Part shown: one piece after another, positions 2,082 to 44,331 of the stretch | How positions within the stretch are numbered: position 1 is the stretch's first letter | Layout: each line of letters opens with the position of its first letter | Origin: Octopus sinensis | Lineage: Eukaryota | Reading direction: 5' to 3' | Assembly: GCF_006345805.1 (NCBI RefSeq) | Contig: NW_021833586.1 | Coordinates: 14,847 to 78,846 of the forward strand | Length of the DNA stretch: 64,000 nucleotides | The notes under the pieces: model-generated | What the model was told of the DNA's origin: nothing | What the model saw: the letters and a program-made list of their open reading frames with translations, nothing else | The model's database searches: none | Position numbers and translations under genes: made by a program

Positions 2082-2259
2082 ATGTTCGGGAAGAGCTGCT
2101 TTAGGTTGGATCCACCACCTGCCATTTGGTTACCTACGTTACAAGAAAAACATTATGAAGATGATGATGATGATATAAGGGAGAACGAGGACTTCAAGAA
2201 AACTAAACACCAAGGTGATACCATTTTTCCTTGGATGCAGAAACGTCACTCTCTAATAG
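2082..2259 (+). CDS. Scr: Hox gene exon carrying the hexapeptide (MFGKS...DDDDD...[14 protein letters not shown]); 5' boundary uncertain
   Basis: IFPWM matches the Hox YPWM/FPWM hexapeptide. The donor AG|GTATGT at 2259/2260 is phase 1 and joins in frame (G+GA = Gly) to the acceptor at 10714/10715. First in-frame ATG is 2082; the frame is open from 1929. A possible acceptor at 2103-2104 would imply an upstream exon. Confidence 0.75.
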
Positions 2260-2294
2260 GTATGTACTCTACATATTACATATAAACCTTTATT

Positions 2295-2336
<42 letters not shown>

Positions 2337-2376
2337 CTCAATCTATCTATCTATCTACCTTTCTATCTACCTTTCA

Positions 2377-2606
2377 GCGGCGAGCTGGCAGAATCGTTAG
2401 CACGCCGGGCGAAATGCGTAGCCGTATTTCGTCTGCCGTTACGTTCTGGGTTCAAATTACGCTGAGGTCGACTTTGCCTTTCATCCTTTCGGGGTCGATA
2501 AATTAAGTACCAGTTACGCACTGGGGTCGATATAATCGACTTAATCCGTTCGTCTGTCCTTATTTGTCCCCTCTGTGTTTAGCCCCTTGTGGGTAGTAAA
2601 GAAATA
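2377..2606 (+). mobile_element. tRNA-derived SINE, family C
   Basis: Full head-to-tail match to other family C copies in the window. Confidence 0.85.
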
Positions 2607-2665
2607 TCTACCTTTCTAACTATCATTCTATTTCTCTCTCCCTCTTATTCACTCTCTCCCTTTGA

Positions 2666-2699
<34 letters not shown>

Positions 2700-2714
2700 T
2701 ATATATATAATATA

Positions 2715-2746
<32 letters not shown>

Positions 2747-2822
2747 TATATGTGTATGTATATATAGAGAGAGACAGAGAGAGAGGGAAAGAGAGATAAA
2801 TCATAATATCTATGTATGTATG

Positions 2823-2853
<31 letters not shown>

Positions 2854-3188
2854 CTACATATATATATATCTATATATATATGTATAAGTATATGTATGTA
2901 TATATGTATGTATGCATGTATGTTTGTATGTATACACACATTCATATATGGGCACATACAAACATAGATACGCATACATATATTGATATGTAAAAGTAGA
3001 AATACGGACGCATGCACACACATACACACACACTCACTCACATATGTGTATGTCTGGATATATTCCATATGTACATATACATACATATACGTATAATACA
3101 CTGAAACATATATTTAATATAATTCTGTTCGTGTGTAAACTTGTGTATGTGATATACGTATGTATGTATGTATATATATATACATATG

Positions 3189-3228
<40 letters not shown>

Positions 3229-3305
3229 TAATTTACATATATATTTACATATATATATAAGATAGATAGATGTATATATATATATATAATATATACGTAT
3301 GTATA

Positions 3306-3340
<35 letters not shown>

Positions 3341-3804
3341 ATATTACGTATGTATATAAACATAGCTATTTAAAAATTGATATACATATCTAAATATATA
3401 TATAGATGCATATGGACATACAAGCATACACACACGACACACACACATATAATACATATATACATTATATAATGTTTGTATATATATGTATATATACGTT
3501 TATATTTTATAAGTTTGTTTGTGTGTGTGGGGGTAAATTGTGTGTGTGCGCATGCGTGTGTGTGTCGGTGTTTGTGTTCATGTGCATACATAAATACTTA
3601 CTCTCACACGTACATATTTCCTGCACTCTATTAGAAATTTGCAAAGCAATCTGCTAAAATACGTCTGAGACAGTACATTTGGTTCGCGGAGTTGAGCATG
3701 GAAGCTCATCTACCTGCAGTGGCTAAAGTCATGAGCAGTCATAGATGATGCTGATGTTGACGGTGACGACGACGACGATAATAAAAAAGATGAATGTTTC
3801 CTCC

Positions 3805-3979
3805 TCTAGCAATGCCACGCTCCTAAGGGCCGGTTTCCCGGTTTCAGTGGCGTAGAAATTTTCCACCTGGACAGAACGCCGGTCCGTCCCAGGATTACTC
3901 ATCGCCCTGTCCGGGAATCGAAACCACAATCTTACTATCATAAGTCCAGGAACTTAACGACTAAGCCACGCGCCTCCAC
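3805..3979 (-). mobile_element. tRNA-derived SINE, family D, internally deleted
   Basis: Reverse strand reads GTGGAGGCGCGTGGCTTAGTCG..GTGGTTTCGATTCC (A/B boxes); tail matches copies at 56811-57313. Confidence 0.7.
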
Positions 3980-3984
3980 ATAGT

Positions 3985-4185
3985 CCCCCATGTTCTTAAT
4001 CGTCAACAGGTACCATTCCACTGTTCCGAAGCATGTTGTCCACATAGGTTAGACGTTTTCTTCCCCAGTTGACACGCAGGTTCTGGATGCCTGACCCAAT
4101 GACCAGCAATTCTCGTTCTTCTCCGCTAAATCTTCCCAGTCACACTGGATATGTCTTGATAAAGCTGCTCGTTGGTTAAATGAGC
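3985..4185 (-). mobile_element. Degenerate RTE-like LINE 3' ORF fragment
   Basis: Reverse translation HLTNEQLYQDISSVTGKI*RRRTRIAGHWVRHPE...YVDNMLRNSG resembles the RTE-clade C-terminal region (R-R-x-R-x-A-G-H motif); contains stops and frameshifts. Confidence 0.6.
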
Positions 4186-4852
4186 TGTCCATATAACATT
4201 CAGAGCCAACACCTTAACCACTAAGCCACACACCCCACAATGGGGATTATATATATATATATATTGAAATATAGAAAGAAAATCGCAGATTTTGCTGAGG
4301 AGTGCAAAACTTTGAGCTGAGCTTGGAGTGTACTTGATTACAGAATTTCTCTAAATTCACTTCATGTAGCAGAATACATAAAATACATCAAGTAAATGGA
4401 TTTTTGAATATTGGGATAGACCTGGTAACTACATTGTTTCTGGCTGCTTTGTCTTAGCCAAGATGATAGTGTTAGGAGCTTTCATAGCCTTAAATTAGTT
4501 TAACGATATATAATACCATCAGAAACTAGAAAGTATAAGATTATAATAGGAAAGAGCTTAGAGAATAACAATGTAACCATACTTTGCGATATACCAATGT
4601 GCACAGACAAGGGAATCATTACTGATCGGTAAAGTATTGCCTGATCGACCCGGTGCTGCTATCAAAGGTCTTCTGAAATGGTAGTGTCTCCTAATGGATG
4701 TCTCAGTCCAAACTGATGACAATGAATTTCGCAAATGATTGGCAAAATTAAAGAAAAAGAAAAACCTGGAAATAGAGATAAACCGGATATGCGAACTGGA
4801 AAGAGAAACAATATCTACGACAACTATTGTCTTGGAAAGGATAATAATAATA

Positions 4853-4991
4853 TTAGGTTGTCCCAAAAGTTCGTAAACACTTGCGAAAATTGAATTTTTA
4901 CTCGCCAAGTACTAACAAAAACAACAAAAATTATTCCTCAAAATAAAGACCATTATTTTCCAAGACTTTCTACGAACTTTTGGGACAACCT

Positions 4992-4993
<2 letters not shown>
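4853..4993. mobile_element. Tc1/mariner-type MITE
   Basis: Perfect 20-bp TIR GGTTGTCCCAAAAGTTCGTA (4856-4875 / 4971-4990), TA on both flanks, inserted in a (TAA)n tract. Confidence 0.8.
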
Positions 4994-5039
<46 letters not shown>

Positions 5040-6014
5040 CATGTACACAGATATATAACGCAAACTATACGAAATTATAAATATGCACAACCGCGCACCA
5101 ACCCACATGCTTATTTAGGTTTGGCGGCCTACGCACACAATCAATAAAATAATATTTACTGATTTCTTATAGAGGGGAACTAAGATTTACAGCCATCTCA
5201 TATTTGCTTCTCTAGGTTTGTAGCACTTAAGAGAACTTAGGAGCGCATAATGCGTCTGCTAATTCATGAATAGCGCTCTGAACTGGCTCTGGTATTCCAA
5301 CATCGTGTTGCCTAAAGTGAGAATGTTTGATCCAAAACAAACTTCAGTGAAAGGCCTTTACAGGTTCGAATACGTGTCAAACATATTTGAAATGGCAGAA
5401 ACTAAAAATGGCCAATTTTCAAAGCAATTCACATTGCTTGTGACCTTTTCTGTAAGAAAGATATGTTCGTATGCGAAATTTAATGTAATTCGGTGCAAAA
5501 CACTGGCCTGCATTTTCAAACATCCATTTTTTAAAATAATATATTAAGAAGAAAAACAATAAATTAAACATTTTGCAAAAAAAGCAACTAGGAATTGACG
5601 TTTGCAATTAAATTGATTTATAGAAATATAAAGACAAACAACCAGAATTTTATAAAGTTCAAAGTATTTTAGTTTTAATTATTTCATTAACGGATTTAAA
5701 GATAAACAAATAACCTAGAAAACGGCGTAAATCAAAGAGAAGGAAATTAGATTCTAAATCCAGGAAGAAGAGAGATTAAGATTTTTATTTATCCCCATTT
5801 GAATAGTTTAAATTTCAGAACTGATTTTTTTTACTGTTTTTTTTTGTACTGTGCACTTTTTATTTTATTTATTTAGTCCTTTTTTTTTCATACAAAAAAT
5901 ATTTCTATTAATCAGCAATACTTAAAAATCTGGTGTAAAGTATCTTAGAGGAGCAATAGTTTCAAATATCTATGTTCAGAGTTCAAACCATCCTAGGGAC
6001 AATATATATATATA

Positions 6015-6200
6015 TCTTATATAAAATCCGTTCTGTCTGTCTGTGTGTGGCTTCTAGGATCTCGGGCATCCTCCATCCGATTGCGCTCAAATTTGATATG
6101 TAGACACCGACGGTATCAGGACGTGTATAAGTCTTGAAAACATTTACAAAAATCGATTCCAGGTGAGAATGCGATCGATAAAGCCGTGGGAAATCGTTTT
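6015..6200 (+). mobile_element. Probable Helitron-type non-autonomous element, 5' fragment
   Basis: A|TCTTATATAAAA start followed by (TCTG)n, like the 5' end of the element at 61173; no CTAG 3' end found. Confidence 0.4.
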
Positions 6201-6404
6201 TATTTGGAATAAAAATAAGTCTATCTTTATTTCTTCTTTTGCTGGTGTCTCAAATTTAGGTTAAATCAGAGTTTCTCAAAGGGGAGACCTATGGGAGGGT
6301 CGGGCAAGTTGTTTTGAGAAAATTTGGTTTAAATGTTTGACAACTCAGCACAGTCCATTGGACGAGGGGAGGGCGTTTTGCTCGTATATATATATTCATA
6401 TACA

Positions 6405-6435
<31 letters not shown>

Positions 6436-6671
6436 GCGCGCGTGTGTGTGTGTGTGTGTGTGTGTGTGATAAGAAGCTTGCTTGGCATTTGGGCTAGTGT
6501 CTTCTACTCTAGCTTCGGCCGACTAAAGCCTTGTATATGAGTAAACACAAGAGTACTCGGAAATTTGCATTAGCTTCGGTTGAATTTTATTTAATGCATT
6601 CATAAACGATTACTTCATAATGCACAGTACATCATCATATGGTAAAACTTTTTCACAGATAAAATTTTAGC

Positions 6672-7003
6672 ATCGCCCCTTCGGTCACGACACAGACCAT
6701 GGGATTGCACCTAGAAAGTTACCCTCCCAGGCACAAGTCCCAGCAAAGTTGTTTTACGGAAGACCAGCCGTCGCTCATGTATACCGGCCTCCCCTCTCCA
6801 CGCCACCAGTGTTATCGAAGGGAAAGGCAAAGGCCGATACAGTTTGGCACCTGTGACGTCGCAATTCATTTCTACAGATGAGTGAACAACGTGAGCAACG
6901 TGAAATAAAGTGTCTTGCTCAAGAACACAACTCACAACCCGGTACTGGATTCGAGCTCACAACCTCACGATCGTAAGCTCGACGCTCTAACCACAGAGCC
7001 ATG
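6672..7003 (-). mobile_element. tRNA-derived SINE, family E (central GTGTTCTTGAGCAAGACACTTT domain)
   Basis: A/B-box-like head on the reverse strand; homologous + strand copy at ~34590-34880. Confidence 0.75.
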
Positions 7004-7486
7004 TTGTTCCATGACAATACCTATAATATTATTCCCTCAAACTCTTGAGGCTAGCGAGCTGAAAGAATCGTTAGAGTGATGGAAGAAGGCGGCGAACTGG
7101 CGAAATATTTAGAGCGTCGGAAAAACATGCCTTGTCATTTGAATTATTCAGTACATTCCGTGTTCAAAACCCGTCACAATTATCTATACCTTTCATCCTT
7201 TACGGGTCGATAAAATAATCTGCCAGTGAAGTAGTGCAGTCGATGGTATCAACTTATCCTCTCCCGTCAAAATTACTGAAACTACCTACTGCAGTGATTC
7301 TCAACTCCCTCCTTTTTTTTTACCTTTGGATCCCTTTGACTGCTATTTTACTCGACTGGATCTCCATCGCCATGAAGTGTTTAAAAAGTCTTATATTTTT
7401 ATAAATAAGTATTATTAGGAAATGCAGTTAGAAAATTGTTAAGATATCTTATACATTATAAAAGTAAAATTAATTAATTGCACATA

Positions 7487-7611
7487 GGCGTAGGAGTAGC
7501 TGTGTGGTAAGTAGCTTGCTAACCAAGCACATGGTTCCGGGATCAGTCCCACTGCGCGGCATCTTGGGCAAGTGTCTTCTGCTATAGCTCCGGGTCGACC
7601 AAAGCCTGTCG

Positions 7612-7652
<41 letters not shown>

Positions 7653-7872
7653 GTGTGTGTGTTTTTGAGTCTGTGTTTGTCCCCCTAGCATTGCTTGACA
7701 ACCGATGCTGGTGTGTTTACGTCCCCGTCACTTTGCGGTTCGGCAAAAGAGACCAATAGAATAAGTACTGGGCTTACAAAAAATAAGTCCCGGGGTCGAT
7801 TTGCTCGACTAAAGGCGGTGCTCCAGTATGGCCGCAGTCAAATGATTGAAACAAGTAAAAGAGTAAAGAGAG
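7487..7872 (+). mobile_element. tRNA-derived SINE, family B (head GGCGTAGGAGTGGCTGTGTGGTAAG, internal (TA)/(TG) tract, tail GAAACAAGTAAAAGAG)
   Basis: More than ten related full or partial copies in the window. Confidence 0.85.
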
Positions 7873-8163
7873 AGTATATCATCAGGACACATAGGATCCC
7901 GGTTGAGGACTACTGGAATAAGGTCTACGTACGTAGCGCTTTAAGCAAACATTATCTTAACAATTAAATGAAATCAAAGTCAGAGACGCAAATTGTCACA
8001 AATCAAACATTTAATTTATGTATACTAGATTGTTCAATGCCAGTAATAATATTTATTAATTATGCACATACCTTCATAGAAGTCTGAGTTGCGTTGTCAA
8101 AATGTCGAAAGACAGAAAGCACACACACAATAACCAATAATTATATGTATATATATATTATAT

Positions 8164-8199
<36 letters not shown>

Positions 8200-8209
<10 letters not shown>

Positions 8210-8298
8210 AGGGATGACCATTAAGTGGACATCCATTATGCTAGAATCTACCTCTAGCATAATGGATGTCCACTTAGTGGTCATCCCCCTTATATGTA
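8200..8298. repeat. Near-perfect hairpin (46-bp arms, 7-nt loop)
   Basis: 8200-8245 pairs with 8253-8298 with 2 mismatches. Confidence 0.9.
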
Positions 8299-8425
8299 TG
8301 TAATATACTTTTTTCTGAATCTTCAGATTTTTCAATATGCTAGGCCACTGGTTTTAAATTGATATTAATCAAATAAATATTTAATTTTTCACCCTTATTA
8401 TTTAAATTATATATATATATATAGA

Positions 8426-8485
<60 letters not shown>

Positions 8486-8499
8486 CATATATATATAAT

Positions 8500-8544
<45 letters not shown>

Positions 8545-9155
8545 ATATACATATATATATATATATTATATAATAATTCTGATGCACACTCTATACGATC
8601 TTTTACTCTTTTCGTTTTCTCTCTCTTTTTCTCCCTCTTATTCTTTTAACTCCTCTTCTTCACTATTCTCTCCTATTATTCTGTCACACTCTCTCCCTCA
8701 CTCCTCCTCCCTTGCTTACGTGACTCCCACATGACCATCGGCCATCTTTCTTTCTCTCTCCTCGTTGTAGCTGGAACAAGGAAGACGTTTATCTCCTGCC
8801 CTAACATGATTTACGCGTTTGCCACCACAACCTTGTTTAGGCTTAGCAGCTCTTCCTGTTTGTTTTCATTAACCTGTTTGTGTTACCTATTTTGGCCCTC
8901 CGCAAAATCCCAAATTTTATTTAATTTGCTTTGCGGGAGCAACTGTTTTATCGAAAGCGTATGATTGTTGTTAAATGCTCGAAATATACGAGACTTGAAA
9001 AACAGCCACAACTGATGAAGGGTCGTTCTTTATGTTGTTTGTTTTGTTTTCCATTTGTGTCTTTCGTTGATCGAAAGAACAGTTCATGTCCCATGTACTC
9101 GTGATCCGTACTGTTTTGTTGTACACGTTGTTTCAATACGTTCTGTGCCCACATA

Positions 9156-9200
<45 letters not shown>

Positions 9201-10150
9201 TAATATATATATATATGTACGTATAGATATATGTATATATACATATGTATATATGCAAATATATATTATCTATATTATATATATATATATTGCTCCAGCA
9301 TGGCCGCAGTCAATATGACTGAAACAAGTAAAAAAAAAAGATATATATATATATATGATAGGCTTCTTTCAGTTTTCATCTACCAAATCCACTCACAAGG
9401 CTTTGATCGGCCTGAGGCTATAGTAGAAGACACTTGCCCAACGTGCCACGCGGTGGGATTGAACCCGGAACCATGTGGTTGGTGAACAAGCTACTTACCA
9501 CACAGCCACGTATATATATACATATATATATGAGTACTTGTACGTGTGTGCGCGCGTGTGTGTGTGTGTATGCATATATGTATACATATATGCGTATATA
9601 TGTGCACATATATATGTGACTCTATGAGTATGCGTGTGTGTGTATGTGTGTGTGTGTGTGTGTGCTCTTGTTTAAAAATGAAGCGTATTATATAATGTGG
9701 GATGCATATACAATGACACTTTATATGCGACACCCTAGATATAAACTGACTTTAACAGTTTTTTTCCCCTTTTATCCATGTTCTGTAGACGTTTACACGT
9801 GTTGTTGGAACGTATGAGACTCTGAAATCTTTCATACTGAAGTTGGCACATTTAATTCAGAACCATATATATTTCACAAATCCCATATGGAATCAGTTCT
9901 TGTTTTTGAGAATAAAACCTCTCTTTCGACTCCATTCCCTTCCGTCGCTCATATGTAGTTATTAGTGCTGTTGTTGTTGTTGCTGTTGTTGTTGTTGTTG
10001 TTTTGTTGTTTTGTTGTTGTCGTTATTGTCGTTGTTGTTGTTGTTGTTGTTGTTGTTGTTATTCTTTATGTCCTATATTTTTTCTGAAATGTGTAAATCA
10101 TAGACACACCCAATAATAATAACAATAATAATAATAATAATAATAATAAC

Positions 10151-10197
<47 letters not shown>

Positions 10198-10345
10198 TAG
10201 CAGCAGCAACAACAACAACAAAACAACAACAATAATAATAATAATAATAATAATAGTATAATAATAATATAATAATATAATAATAATGATAGCAGCAGCA
10301 ACAACAACAACAACAACAACAACAATAATAATAATAATAATAATA

Positions 10346-10381
<36 letters not shown>

Positions 10382-10464
10382 TAATAATAATTATTATATT
10401 ATATTATTATTATTATTATTGTTATTGTTATTACCTCTTCTAAATAATAATAATAATAATAATA

Positions 10465-10507
<43 letters not shown>

Positions 10508-10714
10508 TATTATTATTATTATTATTATTATTACCTCTTCTACTATTATAATTCTTTATAAATTTGGAACAAGGTCACGATTTTTAAGGGAAGGTGTAAG
10601 TCGATTACATTAACATCATTATTCAACATAAGTTTAATGATAACAATAACCAGATTAATAAAAAATAATAATTTCTATGATTTTCTATGAATATTCTCTT
10701 ATGGTTTTTCGCAG

Positions 10715-11271
10715 GACATGGTAAAAATGTTGAAGAGTCGAAAAGAAATCGGACAACCTATAGCCAGCACCAAATTCTGGAATTGGAGAAAGAATTTCTC
10801 TTCGATAAATATCTTAACAAAAGAAGAAGAGTTGAAATTGCCGATTCTTTAAATCTGAGAGAAAGACAAATCAAAATTTGGTTCCAAAATCGACGTATGA
10901 AGTGGAAAAAGGAACATCAATTCAACTGTAAAAACCGAATGGTTCAGTTGTCCGATTGTCAACAACTGTTGAGTTTGAACACCAGTGGCATCCAGGTACC
11001 AAAACAGCCTCGGCAGCAGCTACAACTGGAACAACAGAGAATACAACTTCAACAACTACTGCAAGAGCAGCAGCAGCAACAATATCAACAGCTTCAGCAC
11101 CATGGTCCATATCATGAACAGCAACAGGACCACCGGCAACCGGAGCAGAGCGGCCCCCATCGACACCAGAAAGAAGATAAGCAACAACCTACGAACCATC
11201 AACAACATCGACAGTATCATCATTATTTTCAACATCTACAGCAAGTGGAGGCGCAATGGCCCAGTGGTTAG
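10715..11271 (+). CDS. Scr: Homeodomain exon of a divergent Scr/Hox5-like transcription factor with a Gln/His-rich C-terminus; stop lies inside a SINE
   Basis: Homeodomain 10738-10917 reads [60 protein letters not shown]. Helix 3 is Antp-class; T6, H11, K24, N39 and terminal KKEH fit Scr/Hox5. Hox identity is secure; the Scr assignment is likely, not proven. Confidence 0.92.
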
Positions 11272-11625
11272 GGCAGCGGACTCACGGTCGGAGGATCGCG
11301 GTTTCGATTCCAAGACCGGGCGTTTGTGTGTGTTTATTGAGCGAAAATACCTAAAGCTCCACGATCTCCGGCAGGGGGTGGTGGCGACCCCTGTTGAACT
11401 CTTTCGCTCCAACTTTCTCTCACTCTTTCTTCCTGTTTCTTGTCCCCGATTTCCTACGCAACCGCTGAGCCTGGATGCGCATTCATCCATCCGTCGATGC
11501 TCTCGGTGTCGGGCGTTGACCTGCTTTCTCTTCTGCGGGTCTTACGAATAGCAAAGTACCACGTTTCGGACTTCTCCCACTACAGACGGGACGAAGACCG
11601 CTTCACTCAACAAACAAACAAAACA
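11245..11625 (+). mobile_element. tRNA-derived SINE, family A head with alternative tail (A'), inserted in Hox coding sequence
   Basis: A box TGGCCCAGTGG, B box GGTTTCGATTCC, CAA-rich tail, short direct repeat AGCAA (11240-11244 / 11626-11630); homologous copy at 50250-50598. Confidence 0.9.
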
Positions 11626-11630
11626 AGCAA

Positions 11631-11840
11631 AAGCAGCAACAACAACATCAACAACAGGTTCAGCACCATTGTCCATACCATGAACAGCTACAGGACCAAC
11701 GGCAACAGCAGGAGAGTCGCCCCCATCGACACCAGAAAGAAGATAAACAACAACAACCTACGAACCATCAACAAAACCGTCAGAATCATCATTATTATCA
11801 ACATCGAGAGCAGTTAAATTATCACCAACAACAACACTAA
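11631..11840 (+). other. Displaced (or splice-restored) 69-codon Hox C-terminal coding tail
   Basis: Open frame KQQQQHQQQVQHHCPYHEQ...HQQQH*, homologous to 11071-11244 and in frame with the exon once the SINE is removed. Confidence 0.7.
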
Positions 11841-11905
11841 CAACAGCAAAAACAACATCATCGAGAGCAAAATAATGTCCATGTGTGCGTAATTCAAGTG
11901 TATGT

Positions 11906-11911
11906 AATAAA
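11906..11911 (+). terminator. Candidate polyadenylation signal of the Hox gene
   Basis: AATAAA ~65 nt after the TAA at 11838-11840, ATTAAA at 11934-11939, then a T-rich tract. Confidence 0.4.
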
Positions 11912-12233
11912 CGAGATGCGGGAATTCACTCCCATTAAACCTGTATATTTTATCTTTTCTTTTACTTCTTTCAGGACTAACGGCCATGTTGGGGTACCAC
12001 CTTGAAGACTTTTTAGTCGAATGAATCAATCCCAGTACCTTTTTAAAGTCTGGTACTTATTCATCACAAACGATGAGCTTCTTTCAGTTTCCGCCTAACA
12101 TATCCAATCATAAGTCTTTTGGTCGGCCCCAGGCTATAATAAAACAGACTTTCCCAAGTGCCACGCATTAGGCTGAACCCGTAACTATATTGCATAAATG
12201 CATGTATAAATACGTATATGCATCTATCTATCC

Positions 12234-12310
<77 letters not shown>

Positions 12311-12349
12311 ACTACCTACCTATCTATCTATGACACGTATATTATATTA

Positions 12350-12758
12350 CTCTCTACTCTTTACTCTTTTACTTGTTTAAGTCATTTGACTGCGGCCATG
12401 CTGGAGCACCGCCTTTAGTCGAGCAAATCGACCCCGGGACTTATTCTTTGTAAGCCCAGTACTTATTCTATCGGTCTCTTTTTGCCGAGCCGCTAAGTGA
12501 CGGGGATGTAAACACACCAGCATCGGTTGTCAAGCAATGCTAGAGGGATAAACACACACACACAAACACATACATATATATATATACATATATACGACAG
12601 GCTTCTTTCAGTTTCCGTCTACCAAATTCACTCACAAGGCATTGATCGGCCCGGGGCTATAGCAGAAAACATTTGCCCAAGGTGCCATGCAGTGGGACTG
12701 AACCCGGAACGATGTGGTTGGTTAGCAAGCTACTTACCACACAGCCACTCCTGCGCCT
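12350..12758 (-). mobile_element. SINE family B, full length
   Basis: Reverse complement of the 7487 copy. Confidence 0.85.
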
Positions 12759-13565
12759 ATTAATGCATATATGTATAGTAACTTGTCTCACTATGTTCGC
12801 AGTTTTAGTAGCTGATAAACTGAACTATTATATATGAACTCCATCATGCACACACGCGCACACGCACACACACAGTGCGTTTGTTGTTATCTTCTATGTC
12901 CTTCCTGTTGGGGCGTTAATTCTGGGCACCGGTGTGTAGTAATAATAAATGGAATTTACCTGAAGCTTCCGAATGAGAGAGCGAGCCTACGTAAACAAAA
13001 TTACAACAAAACAATAATGTCAGACTGAATGAGTAATAGAAAGTATGATAGGCGGGGGGGGGGAGATGAAGTGAGTAAGACAATGAGAAAGTGAATGATA
13101 CAGGGACCACGTGGTTAATCGATAGAGCTCCTGAAGAGACATTTTTTTTTGGTTCTTTGTTTTCTAAGTGTTATCGCAATAACGAGAGTGCACTCGGTCA
13201 CTGTTACCTAATGATCATAGGATCACTTTACAATATTGGCAGCAAGGCTAAGTGGACAGAAATTGATTATATCACATGCTGTGTGACGTAATGTATAATT
13301 AATTATAACGACACGCATATGTTTGCACGTATGTATGTATGTATGTATGTATGTATGTATGTATGGAGGCTTTATGGCCTGTGAAAGGATGAAAGGCCAA
13401 AGATGAACATAAGTGCATGAATGTATTTGAAACCCAAGAGCGTGAAGCATGAAGCTAAATACTGCAATACATTTAGTTTAGCTTCAGTTTATTATTGCAT
13501 ATATATACATACATACATACATATATACACATGTATTAATGTATACATATATATTATATAATATA

Positions 13566-13624
<59 letters not shown>

Positions 13625-13632
13625 ACAGGACC

Positions 13633-14016
13633 CGCAGGAGTGACTGTGTGGTTAGTTAGTAGCTTGCTAACCAACAACATGGTTCCGGGTTCAGTTCCAT
13701 TGCGTGGCATCTTGGGCCAGTGTCTTCTGCCTTGTGAGTGGATTTGGTAGACGGAAACTGAAAGAAGCCTGTCGTATATATGAATATATATATATGTGTG
13801 TGTGTGTGTTTGTGTGTCTGTGTTTGTCACCCCTAGCATTGCTTGACAACCGATGCTGGTGTGTTTACCTCCCGGTCACTTAGCGGTTCGGCAAAAGAGA
13901 CCGATAGAATAAGTACTGGGCTTACAAAGAATAAGTCCTGGGGTCGATTTGCTCGACTAAAGGCGGTGCTCCAGCATGGCCGCAGTCAAAATAACTGAAA
14001 CAAGTAAAAGAGTAAA
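13633..14016 (+). mobile_element. SINE family B, followed by an extra tail fragment at ~14225-14365
   Basis: Matches other family B copies. Confidence 0.85.
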
Positions 14017-16526: not shown

Positions 16527-17430
16527 ATGACCACCACCACAACAACAAACATTACTACCACTATCACCACTACTATCTCAAACACCACCATCACGAGCAC
16601 TACTACCATCAATACCATGACCACCACCACAACTACAACCATTACAACCACCGTCACCACTACCATCTCAAACACCACCACCACCAGCACTATTATCACC
16701 ACTACCATAACCACCACCAGCACTACTACCATGACCACCACCACCACAACAACAACCATTACCACCACTACTATCTCAAACAGCACCAGCACCAGCACTA
16801 CTACAACCACTACCATGACCACCACCACAACTACAACCATCAGAACTACTATCTCAAACAGCACCACCACCAGCACTACTACAACCACTACCATGACCAC
16901 CACCACAACTACAACCATCAGAACTACTATCTCAAACAGCACCACCACAGCACTTACAACCACTACATGACCACCACCACAACTACAACCATCAGAACTA
17001 CTATCTCAAACAGCACCACCACCAGCACTACTACAACCCACTACCATGACCACCACCCACAACTACAACCATCAGAACTACTATCTCAAACAGCACCACC
17101 ACCAGCACTACTACAACCACTACCATGACCACCACCACAACTACAACCATCAGAACTACTATCTCAAACAGCACCACCACCAGCACTACTACAACCACTA
17201 CCAAGACCACCACCACAACTACAACCATCAGAACTACTATCTCAAACAGCACCACCACCAGCACTACTACAACCACTACCATGACCACCACCACAACTAC
17301 AACCATCAGAACTACTATCTCAAACAGCACCACCACCAGCACTACTACAACCACTACCATGACCACCACCACAACTACAACCATCAGAACTACTATCTCA
17401 AACAACGCCACCACCACCACCCACAACAAC
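16527..17430. repeat. ACC/ACT-derived minisatellite, 78-bp unit in the homogeneous part
   Basis: Unit starts recur at 17125, 17203, 17281 and 17359; frameshifts near 16968 and 17040-17060 break the Thr-rich frame. Confidence 0.9.
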
Positions 17431-17833
17431 AACAAAAGCCTTCATTGTATTGCAGCAGGTAAAAGAGAAGGGATGTCAGAAATATCGAAGACCCACAATC
17501 CACCCCACCCAAAACCCACCCCACCCCACCCCAGCCCGACCCCAGCACCAGAGATTCAGGTTTACGAAAGATCCTGTATTAAAATCTAAAGTGAAAACTC
17601 TTCTTCTTCCCGACATGTTGCTGCAATTTCACAATGCCTCTGCCATACTCACGCGCAGAACTCCTGGTTCCTAATTCTAGAGAAAATCGGTCGAATTAAA
17701 TATATTTTGTTTTTGTTGTTGTTGTTGTTGTTGTCCAGCCCCCAAGAAAGCCTAATCGAAGACATCCAGTCGTGACCAACCAACCTTTTATTCCGTGATC
17801 TTTATATAAAAATAACAGCCAAAAGAAGTGTTC

Positions 17834-20800
17834 GTTGGTTGGCTGGTTGGCTGGTTGGTCGGTTGGTGGGTGGGTCGGCAGAATGGCTGGAATGCCGTCT
17901 GTTTGGCTAGTTGGTTGGTTTGTCGGTTGGACGTGGAACGCCTGGTTGGCTGGTTTGTCATGTGTCGGCTGGTTGGCTGGTTTGTCGGTTGGTTGACTGG
18001 TTGGTTGGTCTGTCGGTTGGTTGACTGGTTGGCTGGTTTGTCGGTTGGTTGACTGGTTGGTTGGTCTGTCGGTTGGTTGCATGGTTGGCTGGTTTGTCGG
18101 TTGGTTGACTGGTTGGTTGGTCTGTCGGTTGGTTGAATGGTTGGCTGGTTTGTCGGTTGGTTGACTGGTTGGCTGGTTTGTCGGTTGGTTGACTGGTTGG
18201 TTGGTCTGTCGGTTGGTTGACTGGTTGGTTGGTCTGTCGGTTGGTTGACTGGTTGGCTGGTTTGTCGGTTGGTTGACTGGTTGGCTGGTTTGTCGGTTGG
18301 TTGACTGGTTGGTTGGTCTGTCGGTTGGTTGACTGGTTGGCTGGTTTGTCGGTTGGTTGCCTGGTTGGTTGGTCTGTCGGTTGGTTGACTGGTTGGCTGG
18401 TTTGTCGGTTGGTTGAATGGTTGGCTGGTTTGTCGGTTGGTTGACTGGTTGGCTGGTTTGTCGGTTGGTTGACTGGTTGGTTGGTCTGTCGGTTGGTTGA
18501 CTGGTTGGCTGGTTTGTCGGTTGTTGACTGGTTGGTTGGTCTGTCGGTTGGTTGACTGGTTGGTTGGTGTCGTCGGTTGGTTGACTGGTTGGCTGGTTTG
18601 TCGGTTGGTTGACTGGTTGGTTGGTCTGTCGGTTGGTTGACTGGTTGGCTGGTTTGTCGGTTGGTTGACTGGTTGGTTGGTCTGTCGGTTGGTTGACTGG
18701 TTGGCTGGTTTGTCGGTTGGTTGACTGGTTGGTTGGTCTGTCGGTTGGTTGACTGGTTGGTTGGTCTGTCGGTTGGTTGACTGGTTGGCTGGTTTGTCGG
18801 TTGGTCGTCGGCCGACTGGTTGGCTGGTTTGTCGGTTGGTTGAATGGTTGGTTGGTTTGTCGGTTGGTTGACTGGTTGGCTGGTTTGTCGGTTGGTTGAC
18901 TGATTGGTTGGTCTGTCGGTTGGTTGACTGGTTGGCTGGTTTGTCGGTTGGTTGACTGGTTGGTTGGTCTGTCGGTTGGTTGACTGGTCTGGTTGGTTGG
19001 TCTGTCGGTTGGTTGACTGGTTGGCTGGTTTGTCGGTTGGTTGACTGGTTGGTTGGTCTGTCGTTGGTTGACTGGTTGGTTGGTCTGTCGGTTGGGTTGA
19101 CTGGTTGGCTGGTTTGTCGGTTGGTCGTCGGCCGACTGGTTGGCTGGTTTGTCGGTTGGTTGAATGGTTGGTTGGTTTGTCGGTTGGTTGACTGGTTGGT
19201 TGGTCTGTCGGTTGGTTGACTGGTTGGCTGGTTTGTCGGTTGGTTGACTGGTTGGTTGGTCTGTCGGTTGGTTGACTGGTTGGCTGGTTTGTCGGTTGGT
19301 TGACTGGTTGGTTGGTCTGTCGGTTGGTTGACTGGTTGGTTGGTCTGTCGGTTGGTTGACTGGTTGGCTGGTTTGTCGGTTGGTTGACTGGTTGGTTGGT
19401 CTGTCGGTTGGTTGACTGGTTGGTTGGTCTGTCGGTTGGTTGACTGGTTGGCTGGTTTGTCGGTTGGTTGAATGGTTGGTTGGTTTGTCGGTTGGTTGAC
19501 TGGTTGGTTGGTCTGTCGGTTGGTTGACTGGTTGGCTGGTTTGTCGGTTGGTTGACTGGTTGGTTGGTCTGTCGGTTGGTTGAATGGTTGGCTGGTTTGT
19601 CGGTTGGTTGACTGGTTGGCTGGTTTGTCGGTTGGTTGACTGGTTGGTTGGTCTGTCGGTGTGACTGGTTGGCTGGTTTGTCGGTTGGTTGACTGGTTGG
19701 TTGGTCTGTCGGTTGGTTGACTGGTTGCTTGGTCTGTCGGTTGGTTGACTGGTGGCTGGTTTGTCGGTTGGTCGTCGGCCGACTGGTTGGCTGGTTTGTC
19801 GGTTGGTTGAATGGTTGGTTGGTTTGTCGGTTGGTTGACTGGTTGGCTGGTTTGTCGGTTGTTTGGTTGACTGGTTGGGTTGGTTGGTCTGTCGGTTGGT
19901 TGACTGGTTGGCTGGTTTGTCGGTGGTTGACTGGTTGGTTGGTCTGTCGGTTGGTTGACTGGTGGCTGGTTTTGTCGGTTGGTTGACTGGTTGGCTGGTT
20001 TGTCGGTTGGTCGTCGGCCGACTGGTTGGCTGGTTTGTCGGTTGGTTGACTGGTTGGTTGGTTTGTCGGTTGGTTGACTGGTTGGCTGGTTTGTCGGTTG
20101 GTCGTCGGCCGACTGGTTGGCTGGTTTGTCGGTTGGTTGACTGGTTGGTTGGTTTGTCGGTTGGTTGACTGGTTGGTTGGTTTGTCGGTTGGTTGACTGG
20201 CTGGCTGGTTTGTCGGTTGGTCATCGGCCAACTGGTTGGCTGGTTTGTCGGTTGGACATATGTCAGCTGGTTGGTCGGTTGAATGGTTGGCTGGTTTGTC
20301 GGTTGGTCGTCGGTCGGCTAGTTGGTTGGTTTGTCGGTTGGACGTGGAACGCCTGGTTGGCTGGTTTGTCGGCTGGTTGGCTGGTTGGCTGGTTTGTCGG
20401 TTGGTTGACTGGTTGGTTGGTTTGTCGGTTGGTTGACTGGTTGGCTGGTTTGTCGGTTGGTTGACTGGTTGGCTGGTTTGTCGGTTGGTCGTCGGCCGAC
20501 TGGTTGGCTGGTTTGTCGGTTGGTTGACTGGTTGGTTGGTCTGTCGGTTGGTTGACTGGTTGGCTGGTTTGTCGGTTGGTTGACTGGTTGGCTGGTTTGT
20601 CGGTTGGTTGACTGGTTGGCTGGTTTGTCGGTTGGTTGACTGGTTGGTTGGTCTGTCGGTTGGTTGACTGGTTGGCTGGTTTGACGGTTGGTTGACTGGT
20701 TGGCTGGTTTGTCGGTTGGTCGTCAGCCGACTGGTTGGCTGGTTTGTCGGTTGGTTGACTGGTTGGTTGGTTGTCGGTTGTTGGTTGACTGGTTGGCTGG

Positions 20801-23800: not shown

Positions 23801-25130
23801 GTCGGCTGGTTGGCTGGTTTGTCGGTTGGTCGTCGGTCGGCTGGTTGGCTGGTTTGTCGGTTGGTCGTCGGTCGGCTGGTTGGCTGTTTGTGGTTGGTTG
23901 GTGGTCGGTTGGTTGTCTGGTTGGCTGGTTTGGTCGGTTGGTCGTCGGTCGGTGTTTGTTGGCTGGTTTACTTGTTGGTTGGTGGGTCGGTTGGTTGACT
24001 GGTTGGCTGGTTGTCGGTTGGACAATGTCAGCTGGTTGGTTGGTCTGTCGGTTGGTTGACTGGTTGGCTGGTTTGTCGGTTGATGAACATATGTCAGCTG
24101 GTTGGTTGGTTTGTCGGGTGGTTTACTGGTGGGTGGGTGGGTCAGTTTTGTTACTGGTTGGCTGGTTTGTCGGTTGGTTCGTCGGTCGGCTGGTGGCTGG
24201 TTTGTCGGTGGTTTATTGGTGGTTGGTTGGTTGGTTGGTTGGTTGACTGGTTGGCTGGTTTGTCGGTTGGGCATATGTCAGCTGGTGTGGTTGGTTGTCG
24301 GTTGGTGTTACTGGCTGGTTGGTGGGTCGGTTGGTTGACTTGTTGGCTGGTTGTCGGTTGGTCGTCGGTCGGCTGGTTGGCTGGTTTGTCGGTTGGTTGT
24401 CTTGTTAGTCGGTTTGTCGTCGGCCGACTGGTTGGCTGGTTTGTCGGTTGGTTTACTGGTTGGTTGGTGGGTCGGTTGGTTGACTGGTTGGCTGGTTTGT
24501 CGGTTTGTCGTCGGTCGGCTGGTTGGTTGGTTTTTCGTTTAGTGGGCTGGTTGGTTGGTTGGTCGGTGGGTCTGCTGGCTGGTTGGTTTGTCGGTTGGCC
24601 GTCGGTCGGCTTGTTTACTGGTTTGTCGGCTGGTTGACTGGTTGGTTTGTCGGTTGGTTGTCTGGTTGGTTGGTTTGACTGTGGGGGTGGCTGTTTGGCT
24701 GGTTGGCTGGTTTGTCGGTTTGTTTGCTGGTTGGCTGGTGCGCCGGTTGGTTGGCTTGTTTGTTGGTTGGTTGGTTGATTCGCTGGGTGGTCGGTGGATC
24801 GGTTGGTTGGTTGCTTAGTCGATTGGTCGTGGTTCAGCTGGTTGGTTGGCTGGTGGTTTGGTTGGTCGGTTGGTCGTGGGTCGGCTTGTTAATTTGTCGG
24901 TTGGTTGGCTGGTGGGCTGATTGGTCGGTTATTCGGCTGGTTGGTTTGTTGGTCGGTTGGTCATATGTCGGCTGGATTTTTGGTTGATGGTTGGTTGGCT
25001 GGTTTGTCCGTTGGTTGGCTGGTTGGCTTGTTGGTTAGTTGGTCAACTGGTTGGTTGGTCGGCGGGTTTGCTGTTTCGCTGGTTTGTCCGTCGGTTGGCT
25101 GGTTGGTAGGTTGGTCCGCTGGTTGGTTGA
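17834..25130. repeat. ~7.3-kb satellite built from GGTT tetramers; 28-bp core unit GGTTGGTTGACTGGTTGG(C/T)TGGT(T/C)TGTC
   Basis: Read directly from the sequence; two interspersed 28-mer variants dominate ~18000-19700. Confidence 0.95.
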
Positions 25131-32643: not shown

Positions 32644-32850
32644 GAGAGCGCAATGGCCTAGTGGTTAGGGCAGCGGACTCGCGGTCGCAGGATCGCGGTT
32701 TCGATTTTCAGACTGGGCGTTGTGTGTGTTTATTGAGCGAAAAGACCTAAAGCTCTACGAGGCTCCGCAGGGGTGGTGATCCCTGCTGTACTCTTTCACT
32801 CTTTCACTACAATGGCGGTGCCCCAGCATGCCCAGCTCAAGAGCGAAACT
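32644..32850 (+). mobile_element. SINE family A, 3'-truncated
   Basis: Same head as 11245, 50250 and 44302. Confidence 0.8.
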
Positions 32851-43914: not shown

Positions 43915-44302
43915 GGATGGAAGCACTCCGTCGGTTACGACGACGAGGGTTCCGGTTGATCCGAATCAATGGAACAGCCTGCTCGTGAAATTAACGTGTA
44001 AGTGGCTGAGCACTCCACAGACACGTGTACCCTTAACGTAGTTCTCGGGGATATTCAGCGTGACGCAGAGAGTGACAAGGCCGGCCCTTTGAAATACAGG
44101 TACAACGGAAACAGGAAGTAAGAGTGAGAGAAAGTTGTGGTGGAAGAGTACAGCAGGGATCACCACCATCCCCTGCCGGAGCATCGTGGAGCTTTAGGTG
44201 TTTTCGTTCAATAAACACTCACAACGCCCGGTCTGGGAATCGAAACCGCGATCCTATGACCACGAGTCCGCTGCCCTAACCACTGGGCCATTGCGCCTCC
44301 AC
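43915..44302 (-). mobile_element. SINE family A, full length with target-site duplication
   Basis: TGATGCTGGTAT direct repeat at 43903-43914 and 44303-44314; A/B boxes. Confidence 0.9.
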
Positions 44303-44331
44303 TGATGCTGGTATACATACGTACGAATCGA

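What the first reader, a model, noticed from the sequence alone, without database searches (positions are those of the whole stretch)
2082..11271. Fast-evolving Scr/Hox5-like homeodomain: candidate duplicated Hox paralogue
Helix 3 (positions 42-60) is Antp-class invariant and Scr signatures remain. About a dozen normally conserved positions differ from the lophotrochozoan Scr consensus as I recall it (T7, S9, Q10, I13, L21, D23, N27, K28, V32, D36, S37, R41). The hexapeptide is IFPWM with a short linker. This looks like a relaxed or neofunctionalised duplicate rather than the main Scr. I recall a report of a tandem Scr duplication in an Octopus assembly, so it may not be new; this needs checking.
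Basis: partly seen in the sequence, partly recalled or inferred. Interest (0 to 1): 0.75.

Follow-up and report, generated by a model that had tools for sequence, protein, structure and literature searches.

The report
Divergent octopus Hox4 gene, not Scr
The window holds an intact, fast-evolving two-exon Hox gene of Octopus sinensis that is most likely the octopus copy of Hox4/Deformed, a gene that several genome papers report as lost in octopuses, rather than a duplicate of Scr.

Summary
Positions 2082-11271 (+) hold a two-exon gene: exon 1 2082-2259 carries an IFPWM hexapeptide, an 8.45-kb phase-1 GT..AG intron follows, and exon 2 10715-11271 carries a homeodomain.

The window is Octopus sinensis contig VCDQ01003319.1, which is unplaced. 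The gene is RefSeq model XP_036355485.1, named 'Hox-C4a-like'.

The Scr-duplicate reading is not supported. Octopus has a canonical Scr elsewhere. This gene carries Hox4 markers:
- I13, N4 and PWMxK.
- A 15-residue linker that aligns without gaps to cephalopod Hox4.
- The same split Gly codon (G|GA) eight codons before the homeodomain. Cephalopod Scr splits an Asp codon at -5.
- A KKEH-Q-x-N flank found only in cephalopod Hox4.

Its best single-domain hit among 1.84 billion representatives is a cephalopod Hox4. Likelihood placement gives Hox4 0.83-0.997 and Scr 0.002-0.165; all other classes score at least 10 lnL units lower in the all-class set. Topology (AU) tests do not reject Scr, so the call is probable, not proven.

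The homeodomain evolves fast (12 unique changes against 1, p≈0.003) but under constraint: helix 3 is untouched, dN is 0.12, and dS is saturated. I found no transcript, orthologue or synteny evidence.

The parts
2082..2259 (+). Exon 1 coding part: 59 codons plus 1 base. It gives a short acidic N-terminal arm, the hexapeptide, and 7 residues before the donor G|GTATGT.
   Evidence: Same start as the NCBI model XP_036355485.1. An upstream coding exon cannot be excluded: the frame stays open back to 1998, and a possible acceptor lies near 2071.
2223..2237 (+). Hexapeptide IFPWM, the Pbx/Exd-contact motif, followed by QK.
   Evidence: A Lys at the second residue after PWM is the Hox4 pattern; mollusc Scr has RR there.
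2260..10714 (+). Intron of 8,455 nt, GT..AG, phase 1. It splits a Gly codon (G|GA) eight codons before the homeodomain and is full of microsatellites and SINEs.
   Evidence: The position, phase and split codon are the same as in the cephalopod Hox4 genomic locus L006. Cephalopod Scr splits Asp G|AT at -5. The Scr-type locus L017, from an unidentified species, splits Glu G|AG at -6.
10715..11271 (+). Exon 2 coding part read as one long ORF: linker, homeodomain, a Gln/His-rich tail, and the stop TAG at 11269-11271.
   Evidence: Weak collinear similarity to P0016 continues about 30 residues past the homeodomain.
10738..10917 (+). Homeobox: 60 codons.
   Evidence: Pfam PF00046 at 78.8 bits. AlphaFold predicts three helices with pLDDT 86-93. 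R3, R5, Y25, R31, I47, Q50, N51, R53 and M54 are all present (sequence).
10861..10917 (+). Recognition helix and what follows it (homeodomain positions 42-60), identical to the Hox4/Hox5 consensus.
   Evidence: There are 0 changes in these 19 positions and 13 in the other 41 (p = 0.003).
10942..10985 (+). A 44-nt GT..AG 'mini-intron' used only by the NCBI model. It shifts the frame and ends the protein at 11117. It is probably a modelling artefact.
   Evidence: The unspliced frame keeps weak similarity to cephalopod Hox4 across this stretch.
11238..11610 (+). A tRNA-like SINE inserted into the 3' end of the ORF. It supplies the last ~11 codons and the stop codon. Its 3' end is approximate.
   Evidence: Further copies lie at 50243-50590, 44091-44310 (-) and 32648-32801, at 85-88% identity. 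ARAGORN calls no tRNA there.
11627..11812 (+). A second copy (85% identity) of the coding tail 11061-11243, lying just past the SINE. In the matching frame it stays open and ends ...HREQLNYHQQQH*, probably the older C-terminus.

Best explanation
This is the Octopus sinensis orthologue of Hox4/Deformed (paralogue group 4), heavily diverged. It is an ordinary Hox transcription-factor gene in structure. Exon 1 encodes a Pbx/Exd-binding hexapeptide (IFPWM) and exon 2 encodes the homeodomain.

Shown: the ORF, both splice sites, the hexapeptide, His at linker position -12, Arg3 and Arg5, and the whole recognition helix (I47, Q50, N51, M54) are intact.

Inferred: the protein still binds TAAT-type sites together with Pbx. 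In contrast, 13 positions in the N-terminal arm, helix 1, the loop and helix 2 have changed, the N-terminal arm is very short, and a SINE has rebuilt the C-terminus. This points to relaxed or redirected selection on partner-contact and regulatory parts, not on DNA reading.

The gene sits on an unplaced 78.8-kb contig between satellite arrays. Together with its divergence, that plausibly explains why surveys reported Hox4 as absent from octopods.
For: **Identity of the window**
- The window is O. sinensis GCA_006345805.1, contig VCDQ01003319.1; the gene is XP_036355485.1 'Hox-C4a-like'.

**Sequence hits**
- In the word-indexed search most named lophotrochozoan hits are Hox4/Dfd and few are Hox5/Scr; no hit is named Hox3, Lox5 or Antp. 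The short-query search gives the same picture.
- In the exhaustive search of 1.84 billion representatives, the best single-homeodomain hit is P0016 (122.5 bits, 68% identity).
- P0016 and P0021 share 59 of 60 homeodomain residues with Euprymna scolopes Dfd, including its derived S4 and K24, and group with it at 83/78.

**Hox4 characters in the candidate**
- Residues I13, N4 (AAT, one step from the AGY Ser codon of cephalopod Hox4; Scr uses TCN), F22, and PWM-x-K.
- KKEH-Q-x-N with loss of the Pro of KLPNTK, shared only with P0016 and P0021.
- BLASTP to P0016 gives 129 bits with no gap from the hexapeptide through the homeodomain; 6 of the 15 linker residues are identical. Sepia Scr gives 110 bits with a 4-residue gap.
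- The intron splits Gly G|GA at -8 in both the candidate and cephalopod Hox4 locus L006, against Asp G|AT at -5 in cephalopod Scr.
- Profile scores are 128.0 bits for PG4 and 122.4 for PG5.

**Phylogeny**
- The ML tree excludes the candidate from the Scr, medial, PG3, PG2, PG1 and Gsx clades.
- Placement weights for PG4 are 0.997 with all rows, 0.93 without Elysia, and 0.83-0.84 with the flank dataset. Without Elysia, the best branch is the stem of cephalopod Hox4.

**Gene content**
- Octopus has a canonical Scr and no other Hox4 (PMC9635652; PMC8257504). Retention needs no duplication and no loss.

**Constraint**
- dN is 0.116 with dS saturated; helix 3 is untouched (p 0.003).
- The homeodomain fold is predicted at pLDDT 86-93.
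Against: - AU topology tests reject nothing. Candidate+mollusc Scr gives p 0.35-0.45, candidate+cephalopod Scr p 0.28-0.30, and candidate+cephalopod Hox4 also only p 0.30-0.53.
- The profile margin is +5.6 bits; known family members show +16 to +47.
- N39 is the Scr/Hox3/Xlox state and lies two nucleotide steps from the Cys of Hox4.
- Raw homeodomain identity hardly separates the classes: 46-49 of 60 to mollusc and cephalopod Hox4, 45-47 of 60 to Scr.
- The strongest placement is beside the divergent sacoglossan Hox4, which shares S9, L21, V32 and S37. That is a long-branch or convergence risk.
- There is no synteny evidence: the contig is unplaced and carries no other gene and no mir-10.
- The protein databases hold no orthologue from any other octopod, and no transcript encodes this protein.
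- The species behind P0016 and P0021 could not be named.
Confidence: 0.68

Rival explanations
1. It is a lineage-specific duplicate of Scr/Hox5 that diverged fast. The true Hox4 was lost in octopods, and this copy took on a relaxed or new role.
For: - N39 (LNL) and K24 match mollusc Scr.
- Homeodomain identity to Scr, 45-47 of 60, is almost as high as to Hox4.
- AU tests do not reject candidate+mollusc Scr or candidate+cephalopod Scr (p 0.28-0.45).
- PG5 placement weight reaches 0.165 in one dataset.
Against: - It needs one duplication plus one loss.
- It needs T13I and S4N, with S4N going from a TCN codon.
- It needs R-to-K after PWM, K61Q, three extra codons in the exon-2 leader, and loss of the RRMQY and KLSHIAKNMN motifs. 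Each of these happens to recreate the cephalopod Hox4 state.
- The ML tree puts the candidate outside the Scr clade at 99/92.
- The best Scr placement is 3.95 lnL units below the best (cephalopod Hox4) placement, Elysia excluded.
- No report of an octopus Scr duplication was found.
Confidence: 0.12
2. It is Hox4-derived but no longer functional: a silent or decaying relic whose ORF has not yet been broken.
For: - No transcript-derived protein for it appears in the collections searched. By contrast, the cephalopod Hox4 P0016 family is present in at least 20 RNA-seq runs, and Sepia Scr is indexed in 72 blocks of the collection.
- Hox4 was not found in O. vulgaris transcriptomes (PMC10509229).
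- The N-terminal arm is very short, a SINE supplies the stop codon, and the locus is embedded in satellites.
- The rate is sharply raised: 12 changes against 1.
Against: - All 244 codons are open and both splice sites are canonical.
- The hexapeptide W and M, His-12, Arg3, Arg5 and all 19 residues of positions 42-60 are kept, while 13 of the other 41 changed (p 0.003).
- dN is 0.116 against saturated dS.
- The fold is predicted with confidence.
- Missing Logan contigs are weak evidence for a low-abundance, stage-restricted embryonic gene.
Confidence: 0.15
3. It belongs to neither group: a member of another class (Hox3, Xlox, or medial Lox5/Antp), or foreign or misassembled DNA.
For: - PDX1 scores about as high as Antp over the homeodomain and shares L21, K24, V32 and N39.
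- In the first tree Pdx1 joined the candidate at 87/60.
- IFPWM is, from my own knowledge, the usual Hox3 form of the hexapeptide.
Against: - Q44 where Xlox has H44; W56 where Hox3 has Y/F; T6 where medial genes have Q6; LNKRRR rather than CRPRR or SRPRR.
- Placement likelihoods fall at least 10 lnL units below the best placement for every class other than PG4 and PG5: Antp 10.3, Lox5 12.6 without Elysia; PG3 22.5, Xlox 23.4 with it.
- Octopus already has its own Xlox, Antp and Lox genes, and O. vulgaris has Hox3.
- The long intron, the microsatellites and a SINE family repeated across the contig fit a coleoid genome.
Confidence: 0.05

Closest known systems
Cephalopod (decapodiform-type) Hox4/Deformed: Euprymna scolopes Dfd (PMC6118893 supplement) and the unnamed transcripts and locus P0016/P0021
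   Same: - Two-exon structure with a long intron that splits a Gly codon (G|GA), phase 1, eight codons before the homeodomain.
- Seven residues between PWM and the intron, and a 15-residue linker with K+2, H+4, S+5, G-8, G-6 and E-1.
- I13, F22 and K24.
- KKEH-Q-x-N flank without the Pro of KLPNTK.
- Identical helix 3.
   Different: - 13 of 60 homeodomain residues differ. The decapodiform sequences differ from the mollusc Hox4 consensus at only 2.
- N39 in place of C39, and F for Y in the hexapeptide.
- An N-terminal arm of 46 residues where P0016 has 166, with no similarity in it.
- A Gln/His-rich tail ending inside a SINE.
Octopus/Euprymna/Sepia Scr (Hox5)
   Same: Antp-class homeodomain with the same helix 3, plus H11, K24, N39, and a phase-1 intron seven residues after PWM.
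   Different: Scr has S7, T13, Y22 and AHALNLTERQ. It has a 12-residue linker RRMQYSQDPDGE, a split Asp codon at -5 and the KLSHIAKNMN flank. It is identical in octopus and squid over the 70 residues compared. The candidate has none of these apart from N39.
Sacoglossan Hox4 (Elysia marginata, Plakobranchus ocellatus 'Hox-D4')
   Same: The highest homeodomain identity (49 of 60) and the same unusual residues S9, L21, V32 and S37. These are a second case of a mollusc Hox4 that has drifted at the same helix 1-2 sites.
   Different: They keep A7, N23-R24, T27-R28, C39, S41 and the (K)QPNTK flank. The shared changes are probably convergent, because the gastropod and cephalopod lineages are each flanked by conserved Hox4 genes.
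Hox genes that left canonical Hox duty after fast divergence (insect zen, bicoid, ftz), cited from general knowledge
   Same: A Hox-cluster gene with a strongly raised rate while its neighbouring paralogues stay frozen.
   Different: No change of expression or function has been shown here, and the recognition helix is unchanged. In bicoid, position 50 changed.

Membership tests
Homeodomain (Pfam PF00046), Antp-class Hox | A 60-residue homeodomain scoring above the curated cut-off | tested here: met
   78.8 bits against a cut-off of 22.9, E 2.6e-22. Three helices are predicted at pLDDT 86-93.
Homeodomain (Pfam PF00046), Antp-class Hox | A hexapeptide (YPWM-type) upstream of the homeodomain, and helix 3 reading [18 protein letters not shown] with Q50 | tested here: met
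   IFPWM at 2223-2237. Homeodomain positions 42-60 are identical to the PG4/PG5 consensus.
Hox4 / Deformed (PG4) | I or V at homeodomain position 13 (PG5-8 have T), and T6 rather than Q6 | tested here: met
   I13 (ATT) and T6.
Hox4 / Deformed (PG4) | The rest of the PG4 consensus: A7, T/S37, C/V39, S/T41 | tested here: not met
   T7, N39 and R41; only S37 fits. These sit among the 13 fast-evolving positions.
Hox4 / Deformed (PG4) | The C-terminal flank KLPNTK(T)R(L) and the hexapeptide form [VI]IYPWM[KR]K | tested here: inconclusive
   The flank QF-NCKNRM keeps N, K and R and lacks the Pro, as in cephalopod Hox4 (QS-NHSK). The hexapeptide TIFPWMQK keeps the K at +2.
Hox4 / Deformed (PG4) | Groups with PG4 sequences in a phylogeny | tested here: inconclusive
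   The ML tree puts it on the PG4 side and outside the Scr clade (99/92) and the medial clade (96/97). Placement weights for PG4 are 0.83-0.997. AU tests do not reject an Scr position.
Hox4 / Deformed (PG4) | The same gene structure as the lineage's Hox4 | tested here: met
   Split Gly G|GA at -8, phase 1, and a 15-residue linker, as in L006 and P0016.
Hox4 / Deformed (PG4) | A position in the Hox cluster between Hox3 and Hox5, with mir-10 nearby | not testable with these tools
   The contig is an unplaced 78.8 kb. The window has no second gene, no mir-10, and none of the tools searches octopod genome DNA.
Scr / Hox5 (PG5) | The lophotrochozoan Scr homeodomain: S7, T13, AHALNLTERQ | tested here: not met
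   T7, I13 and [10 protein letters not shown]; only N39 agrees.
Scr / Hox5 (PG5) | The mollusc Scr flanks: a PWMRRMQY linker of 12-13 residues and the KLSHIAKNMN C-flank | tested here: not met
   The linker is [15 protein letters not shown] (15 residues) and the flank is [14 protein letters not shown] needs a 4-residue gap to align Sepia Scr.
Scr / Hox5 (PG5) | The intron at the cephalopod Scr position (split Asp at -5) | tested here: not met
   The candidate's intron is at -8 in a Gly codon. The Sepia-type Scr loci L037-L043 split G|AT at -5.
Xlox/Pdx (ParaHox) | H44 (TERHIKIW) and I26-S27-R28-P29 | tested here: not met
   Q44 and L26-N27-K28-R29. The best Xlox placement is 23.4 lnL units below the best placement.

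The most novel reading that the evidence does not exclude
Octopods did not lose Hox4. They kept it as a gene released from canonical Hox constraint. It sits apart in satellite-rich DNA, has a stripped N-terminus, a SINE-remodelled C-terminus and a re-surfaced helix 1-2 face, but an untouched DNA-reading helix. In other words it has changed partners or role, a cephalopod parallel to insect zen or ftz. If so, the 'anterior Hox loss' linked to shell loss and body-plan change in octopods would be divergence rather than loss.
Probability: 0.2. Interest if true: 0.7.

Novelty: new member of a known kind. Interest (0 to 1): 0.5.

Why it matters
Several genome papers treat Hox4/Dfd as missing from octopods.
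- PMC8257504 lists Hox2-Hox4 as missing in O. bimaculoides and links breakdown of the Hox cluster to loss of the external shell.
- PMC10509229 could not study Hox4 in O. vulgaris.
- A 140-genome survey lists anterior Hox genes as lost in cephalopods.

A retained but strongly derived Hox4 would correct the octopod Hox complement. It would also turn a supposed gene loss into a case of rate acceleration in one cluster member while its neighbour Scr stays unchanged. That gives evo-devo laboratories a concrete gene to probe in octopus embryos.

It is also a caution about method. The gene sits on an unplaced contig between satellites, so cluster-centred surveys would miss it.

The gene model itself is already in RefSeq, so what is new is the interpretation, not the sequence.

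Tried and rejected
- **AU constrained-topology tests on two datasets.** Every hypothesis, including the favoured one, gave p 0.28-0.53. With 70-80 columns and one long branch they carry no information. I replaced them with fixed-backbone placement likelihoods.
- **Pdx1 as sister.** Judged a long-branch effect. With full class sampling the best Xlox placement is 23 lnL units below the best placement, and the Xlox-specific H44 is absent.
- **Nucleotide and codon comparison of the homeoboxes.** Synonymous sites are saturated (66-70% identity to both Hox4 and Scr). Only single-codon arguments (N4, R41, N39) could be used. dN/dS could not be computed because dS is undefined.
- **Synteny markers.** The window holds no second gene, no Rfam family at gathering score, no mir-10 within 3 mismatches and no tRNA. 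The miRNA 'hits' upstream are microsatellite artefacts.
- **Search for other octopod orthologues or transcripts.** Two word-indexed searches and one exhaustive search found none. The DNA collections offered are viral, metagenomic or prokaryotic, so I did not use them.
- **Naming the species behind P0016 (SRR27666061-87, SRR24189493/98) and P0021 (ERZ21867824).** Accession searches in the paper library failed. Their cephalopod Hox4 identity rests on 59 of 60 homeodomain residues shared with E. scolopes Dfd, including S4 and K24, on the repeat landscape, and on the lack of the window's SINE family in L006.
- **Albertin et al. 2015** is not held in the library.
- **The third homologue search, aimed at a named octopus Scr**, returned none. 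Octopus Scr came from a paper supplement instead.

Full report
**What is there.** The window is the last 64,000 bases of Octopus sinensis contig VCDQ01003319.1 (78,846 bp, GCA_006345805.1). Window position 1 is record position 14,847.

On the + strand an ATG at 2082 opens a 59-codon exon. It encodes a short acidic arm and the hexapeptide IFPWM (2223-2237) and ends at a canonical donor, ATAG|GTATGT, at 2259. The acceptor TTTTTCGCAG| ends at 10714. Exon 2 then runs to a TAG at 11269-11271. The join is in frame: 735 nt, 244 aa.

Pfam finds one Homeodomain at 78.8 bits. A six-frame scan finds no other homeobox or hexapeptide in the 64 kb. NCBI models the same gene as XP_036355485.1, 'homeobox protein Hox-C4a-like'. 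Its model differs only by a 44-nt mini-intron at 10942-10985 that shifts the frame of the tail.

The homeodomain reads [60 protein letters not shown]. Positions 42-60 are identical to the Hox4/Hox5 consensus, and the linker is 15 residues.

**Which Hox gene.** I assembled reference sequences from tool results only.
- Named Hox4 and Hox5 proteins came from the homologue searches.
- The Hox/ParaHox alignment in the supplement of PMC6118893 includes Euprymna scolopes Dfd and Octopus bimaculoides Scr.
- A full-length Sepia esculenta Scr, P0273, was identified because it occurs in runs SRR25097168 and SRR25097169, which PMC10571815 lists as S. esculenta larvae. It also clusters with Xipholeptos notoides hox5.
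- Two unnamed sequences complete the set. P0016 comes from RNA-seq contigs of SRR27666061-87 and SRR24189493/98. P0021 comes from a 110-kb ENA contig, locus L006. Both carry a conserved Hox4 homeodomain that shares 59 of 60 residues with E. scolopes Dfd, including its two derived residues S4 and K24. They group with it at 83/78. I treat them as decapodiform-type cephalopod Hox4. The species could not be named.

Octopus Scr is canonical. Ob_5-Scr equals Es_5-Scr over the homeodomain plus 5 flanking residues on each side. So the candidate is not the animal's only Scr.

The candidate shows the Hox4 state at the characters that separate PG4 from PG5.
- It has I13, against T in all PG5-8.
- It has N4, as in mollusc Hox4. 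Its AAT codon is one step from the AGY Ser of cephalopod Hox4, whereas Scr uses TCN.
- It has F22.
- It has Lys at the second residue after PWM.
- It has the flank KKEH-Q-x-N, which among the sequences compared occurs only in P0016 and P0021. It also lacks the Pro of KLPNTK, as they do.

BLASTP aligns the candidate to P0016 without a gap from the hexapeptide through the homeodomain (129 bits). Six of the 15 linker residues are identical. Sepia Scr gives 110 bits and needs a 4-residue gap.

The intron splits a Gly codon, G|GA, eight codons before the homeodomain in both the candidate and L006. In Sepia-type Scr genomic contigs it splits an Asp codon, G|AT, at -5. In the Scr-type locus L017, from an unidentified species, it splits a Glu codon at -6. 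All three genes have seven residues between PWM and the intron. The difference is therefore the length of the exon-2 leader, which is 8 codons in the candidate and in cephalopod Hox4.

Only N39 is specifically Scr-like.

**Quantitative tests.**
- Profile HMMs of lophotrochozoan PG4 and PG5 score the candidate 128.0 and 122.4 bits. That is +5.6 for PG4, where known members show +16 to +47.
- The exhaustive phmmer search of 1.84 billion representatives returns P0016 as the best single-homeodomain hit. It finds no closer relative.
- In an ML tree of 100 Hox/ParaHox sequences the candidate lies outside the protostome Scr clade (99/92) and the medial clade (96/97). It also lies outside PG3, PG2, PG1 and Gsx. 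It sits in the unresolved PG4 grade beside Elysia Hox4 (82/87).
- That neighbour shares S9, L21, V32 and S37, so convergence or long-branch attraction is likely.
- AU tests on constrained trees were uninformative for every hypothesis, including the favoured one.
- I therefore scored the candidate on every branch of a fixed backbone, summarised in the table below.

| Dataset | PG4 weight | PG5 weight | Notes |
|---|---|---|---|
| All classes, all rows | 0.997 | 0.002 | Dominated by the Elysia branch |
| All classes, Elysia removed | 0.93 | 0.057 | Best branch is the stem of cephalopod Hox4; every other class is at least 10 lnL units below the best placement |
| With hexapeptide and a 12-residue flank | 0.83-0.84 | 0.035-0.165 | |

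Gene-content parsimony points the same way. Retention needs no extra event, whereas an Scr duplicate needs one duplication and one loss. I put the Hox4 assignment at about 0.7.

**Rate and constraint.** Against the mollusc Hox4 consensus the candidate has 13 changes and P0016 has 2. The relative-rate test is 12 against 1 (p 0.002-0.003). All changes lie outside positions 42-60 (p 0.003). dN to cephalopod Hox4 is 0.116 while dS is saturated.

The following are all kept: the ORF, the splice sites, the W and M of the hexapeptide, a His at linker position -12, Arg3, Arg5, Y25, R31, I47, Q50, N51 and M54. From general knowledge, His-12 and Arg3 read the minor groove in the Scr-Exd complex (PDB 2R5Z, the best structural hit). 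AlphaFold predicts the three helices at pLDDT 86-93 and disorder elsewhere.

The most likely mechanism is an ordinary Pbx-assisted, TAAT-reading Hox factor. Its helix 1-2 surface and its arms are under relaxed or redirected selection. This step is inferred, not shown.

**What is missing.** I found no evidence of expression. No transcript-derived protein for this gene appears in the collections, while the squid or cuttlefish Hox4 and Scr are well represented. I found no orthologue from another octopod and no synteny. A silent relic therefore remains possible, at about 0.15.

**Literature.**
- It is listed as missing in O. bimaculoides (PMC8257504; PMC6118893 table).
- It could not be obtained in O. 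vulgaris (PMC10509229).
- It is listed among lost anterior Hox genes.
- Decapodiforms have it (PMC6962438).
- I found no paper that reports an octopod Hox4 or an octopus Scr duplication.

**Context.** The locus is hard to assemble.
- A 3.7-kb satellite of 23-nt units lies about 2.9 kb upstream of the ATG, just outside the window.
- A 78/156-nt minisatellite and a 7.3-kb array of 28-nt units lie at 16.7-25.1 kb.
- A SINE supplies the stop codon and is flanked by a ~185-nt duplication of the coding tail.

This fits the contig being unplaced and the gene being overlooked.

**Verdict.** The class assignment was probably wrong. It is a new member of a known kind and of moderate interest.

Noticed in passing
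window 17830-25129: A 7.3-kb satellite of about 237 copies of a 28-nt unit (CTGGTTGGTTGGTTTGTCGGTTGGTTGA; underlying GGTT period). G+C is 0.54 and strand skew is extreme (GC skew +0.6, AT skew -0.8). It creates spurious ORFs of up to 1,137 aa on the minus strand.
   Followed up: partly
window 16710-17420: A minisatellite with a 78/156-nt unit, 93-95% matches and about 9 copies, immediately before the large satellite.
   Followed up: no
L001 3343-7087 (contig record about 10,270-14,014, just upstream of the window): A second satellite: 166 copies of a 23-nt unit (TCTTTGTCGGCACTCCTCTTTGA) at 90% matches, ending about 2.9 kb upstream of the gene's ATG. The Hox gene is bracketed by satellite arrays, which may explain why the contig is unplaced.
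   Followed up: partly
window 11238-11610; copies at 50243-50590, 44091-44310 (-), 32648-32801: A tRNA-like SINE family at 85-88% identity between copies. One copy is inserted into the 3' end of the Hox ORF and supplies its last ~11 codons and the stop codon. None is present in the 20-kb cephalopod Hox4 locus L006.
   Followed up: partly
window 11061-11243 and 11627-11812: The coding tail just before the SINE is repeated at 85% identity just after it. The second copy stays open in the matching frame and ends ...HREQLNYHQQQH*, which looks like the pre-insertion C-terminus.
   Followed up: partly
window 10942-10985: The RefSeq model removes a 44-nt GT..AG 'intron' inside exon 2, which shifts the frame of the tail. 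That is implausibly short, and the unspliced frame keeps weak similarity to squid Hox4.
   Followed up: partly
proteins P0140, P0142 (Plakobranchus ocellatus, Elysia marginata 'Hox-D4'): Sacoglossan sea-slug Hox4 homeodomains carry S9, T14, L21, V32, S36 and S37. Four of these are the same unusual residues as in the octopus gene. This looks like parallel drift of Hox4 at the same helix 1-2 sites in two mollusc lineages with a reduced or lost shell.
   Followed up: partly
L006 (ENA ERZ21867824 ctg108697l) and L002-L005, L018-L030 (SRR27666061-87, SRR24189493/98): A fully conserved cephalopod Hox4 is well expressed in one unnamed RNA-seq series. It also sits in an assembly filed as a metagenome. 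Its intron exceeds 10 kb. The two sources differ by dS 0.75 with dN 0 in the homeobox.
   Followed up: partly
L001 1-10000: At relaxed thresholds Rfam reports many 'miRNA' matches (mir-297, mir-466, MIR834 and others), all below gathering score and all on TA/CA microsatellites. They are artefacts.
   Followed up: yes
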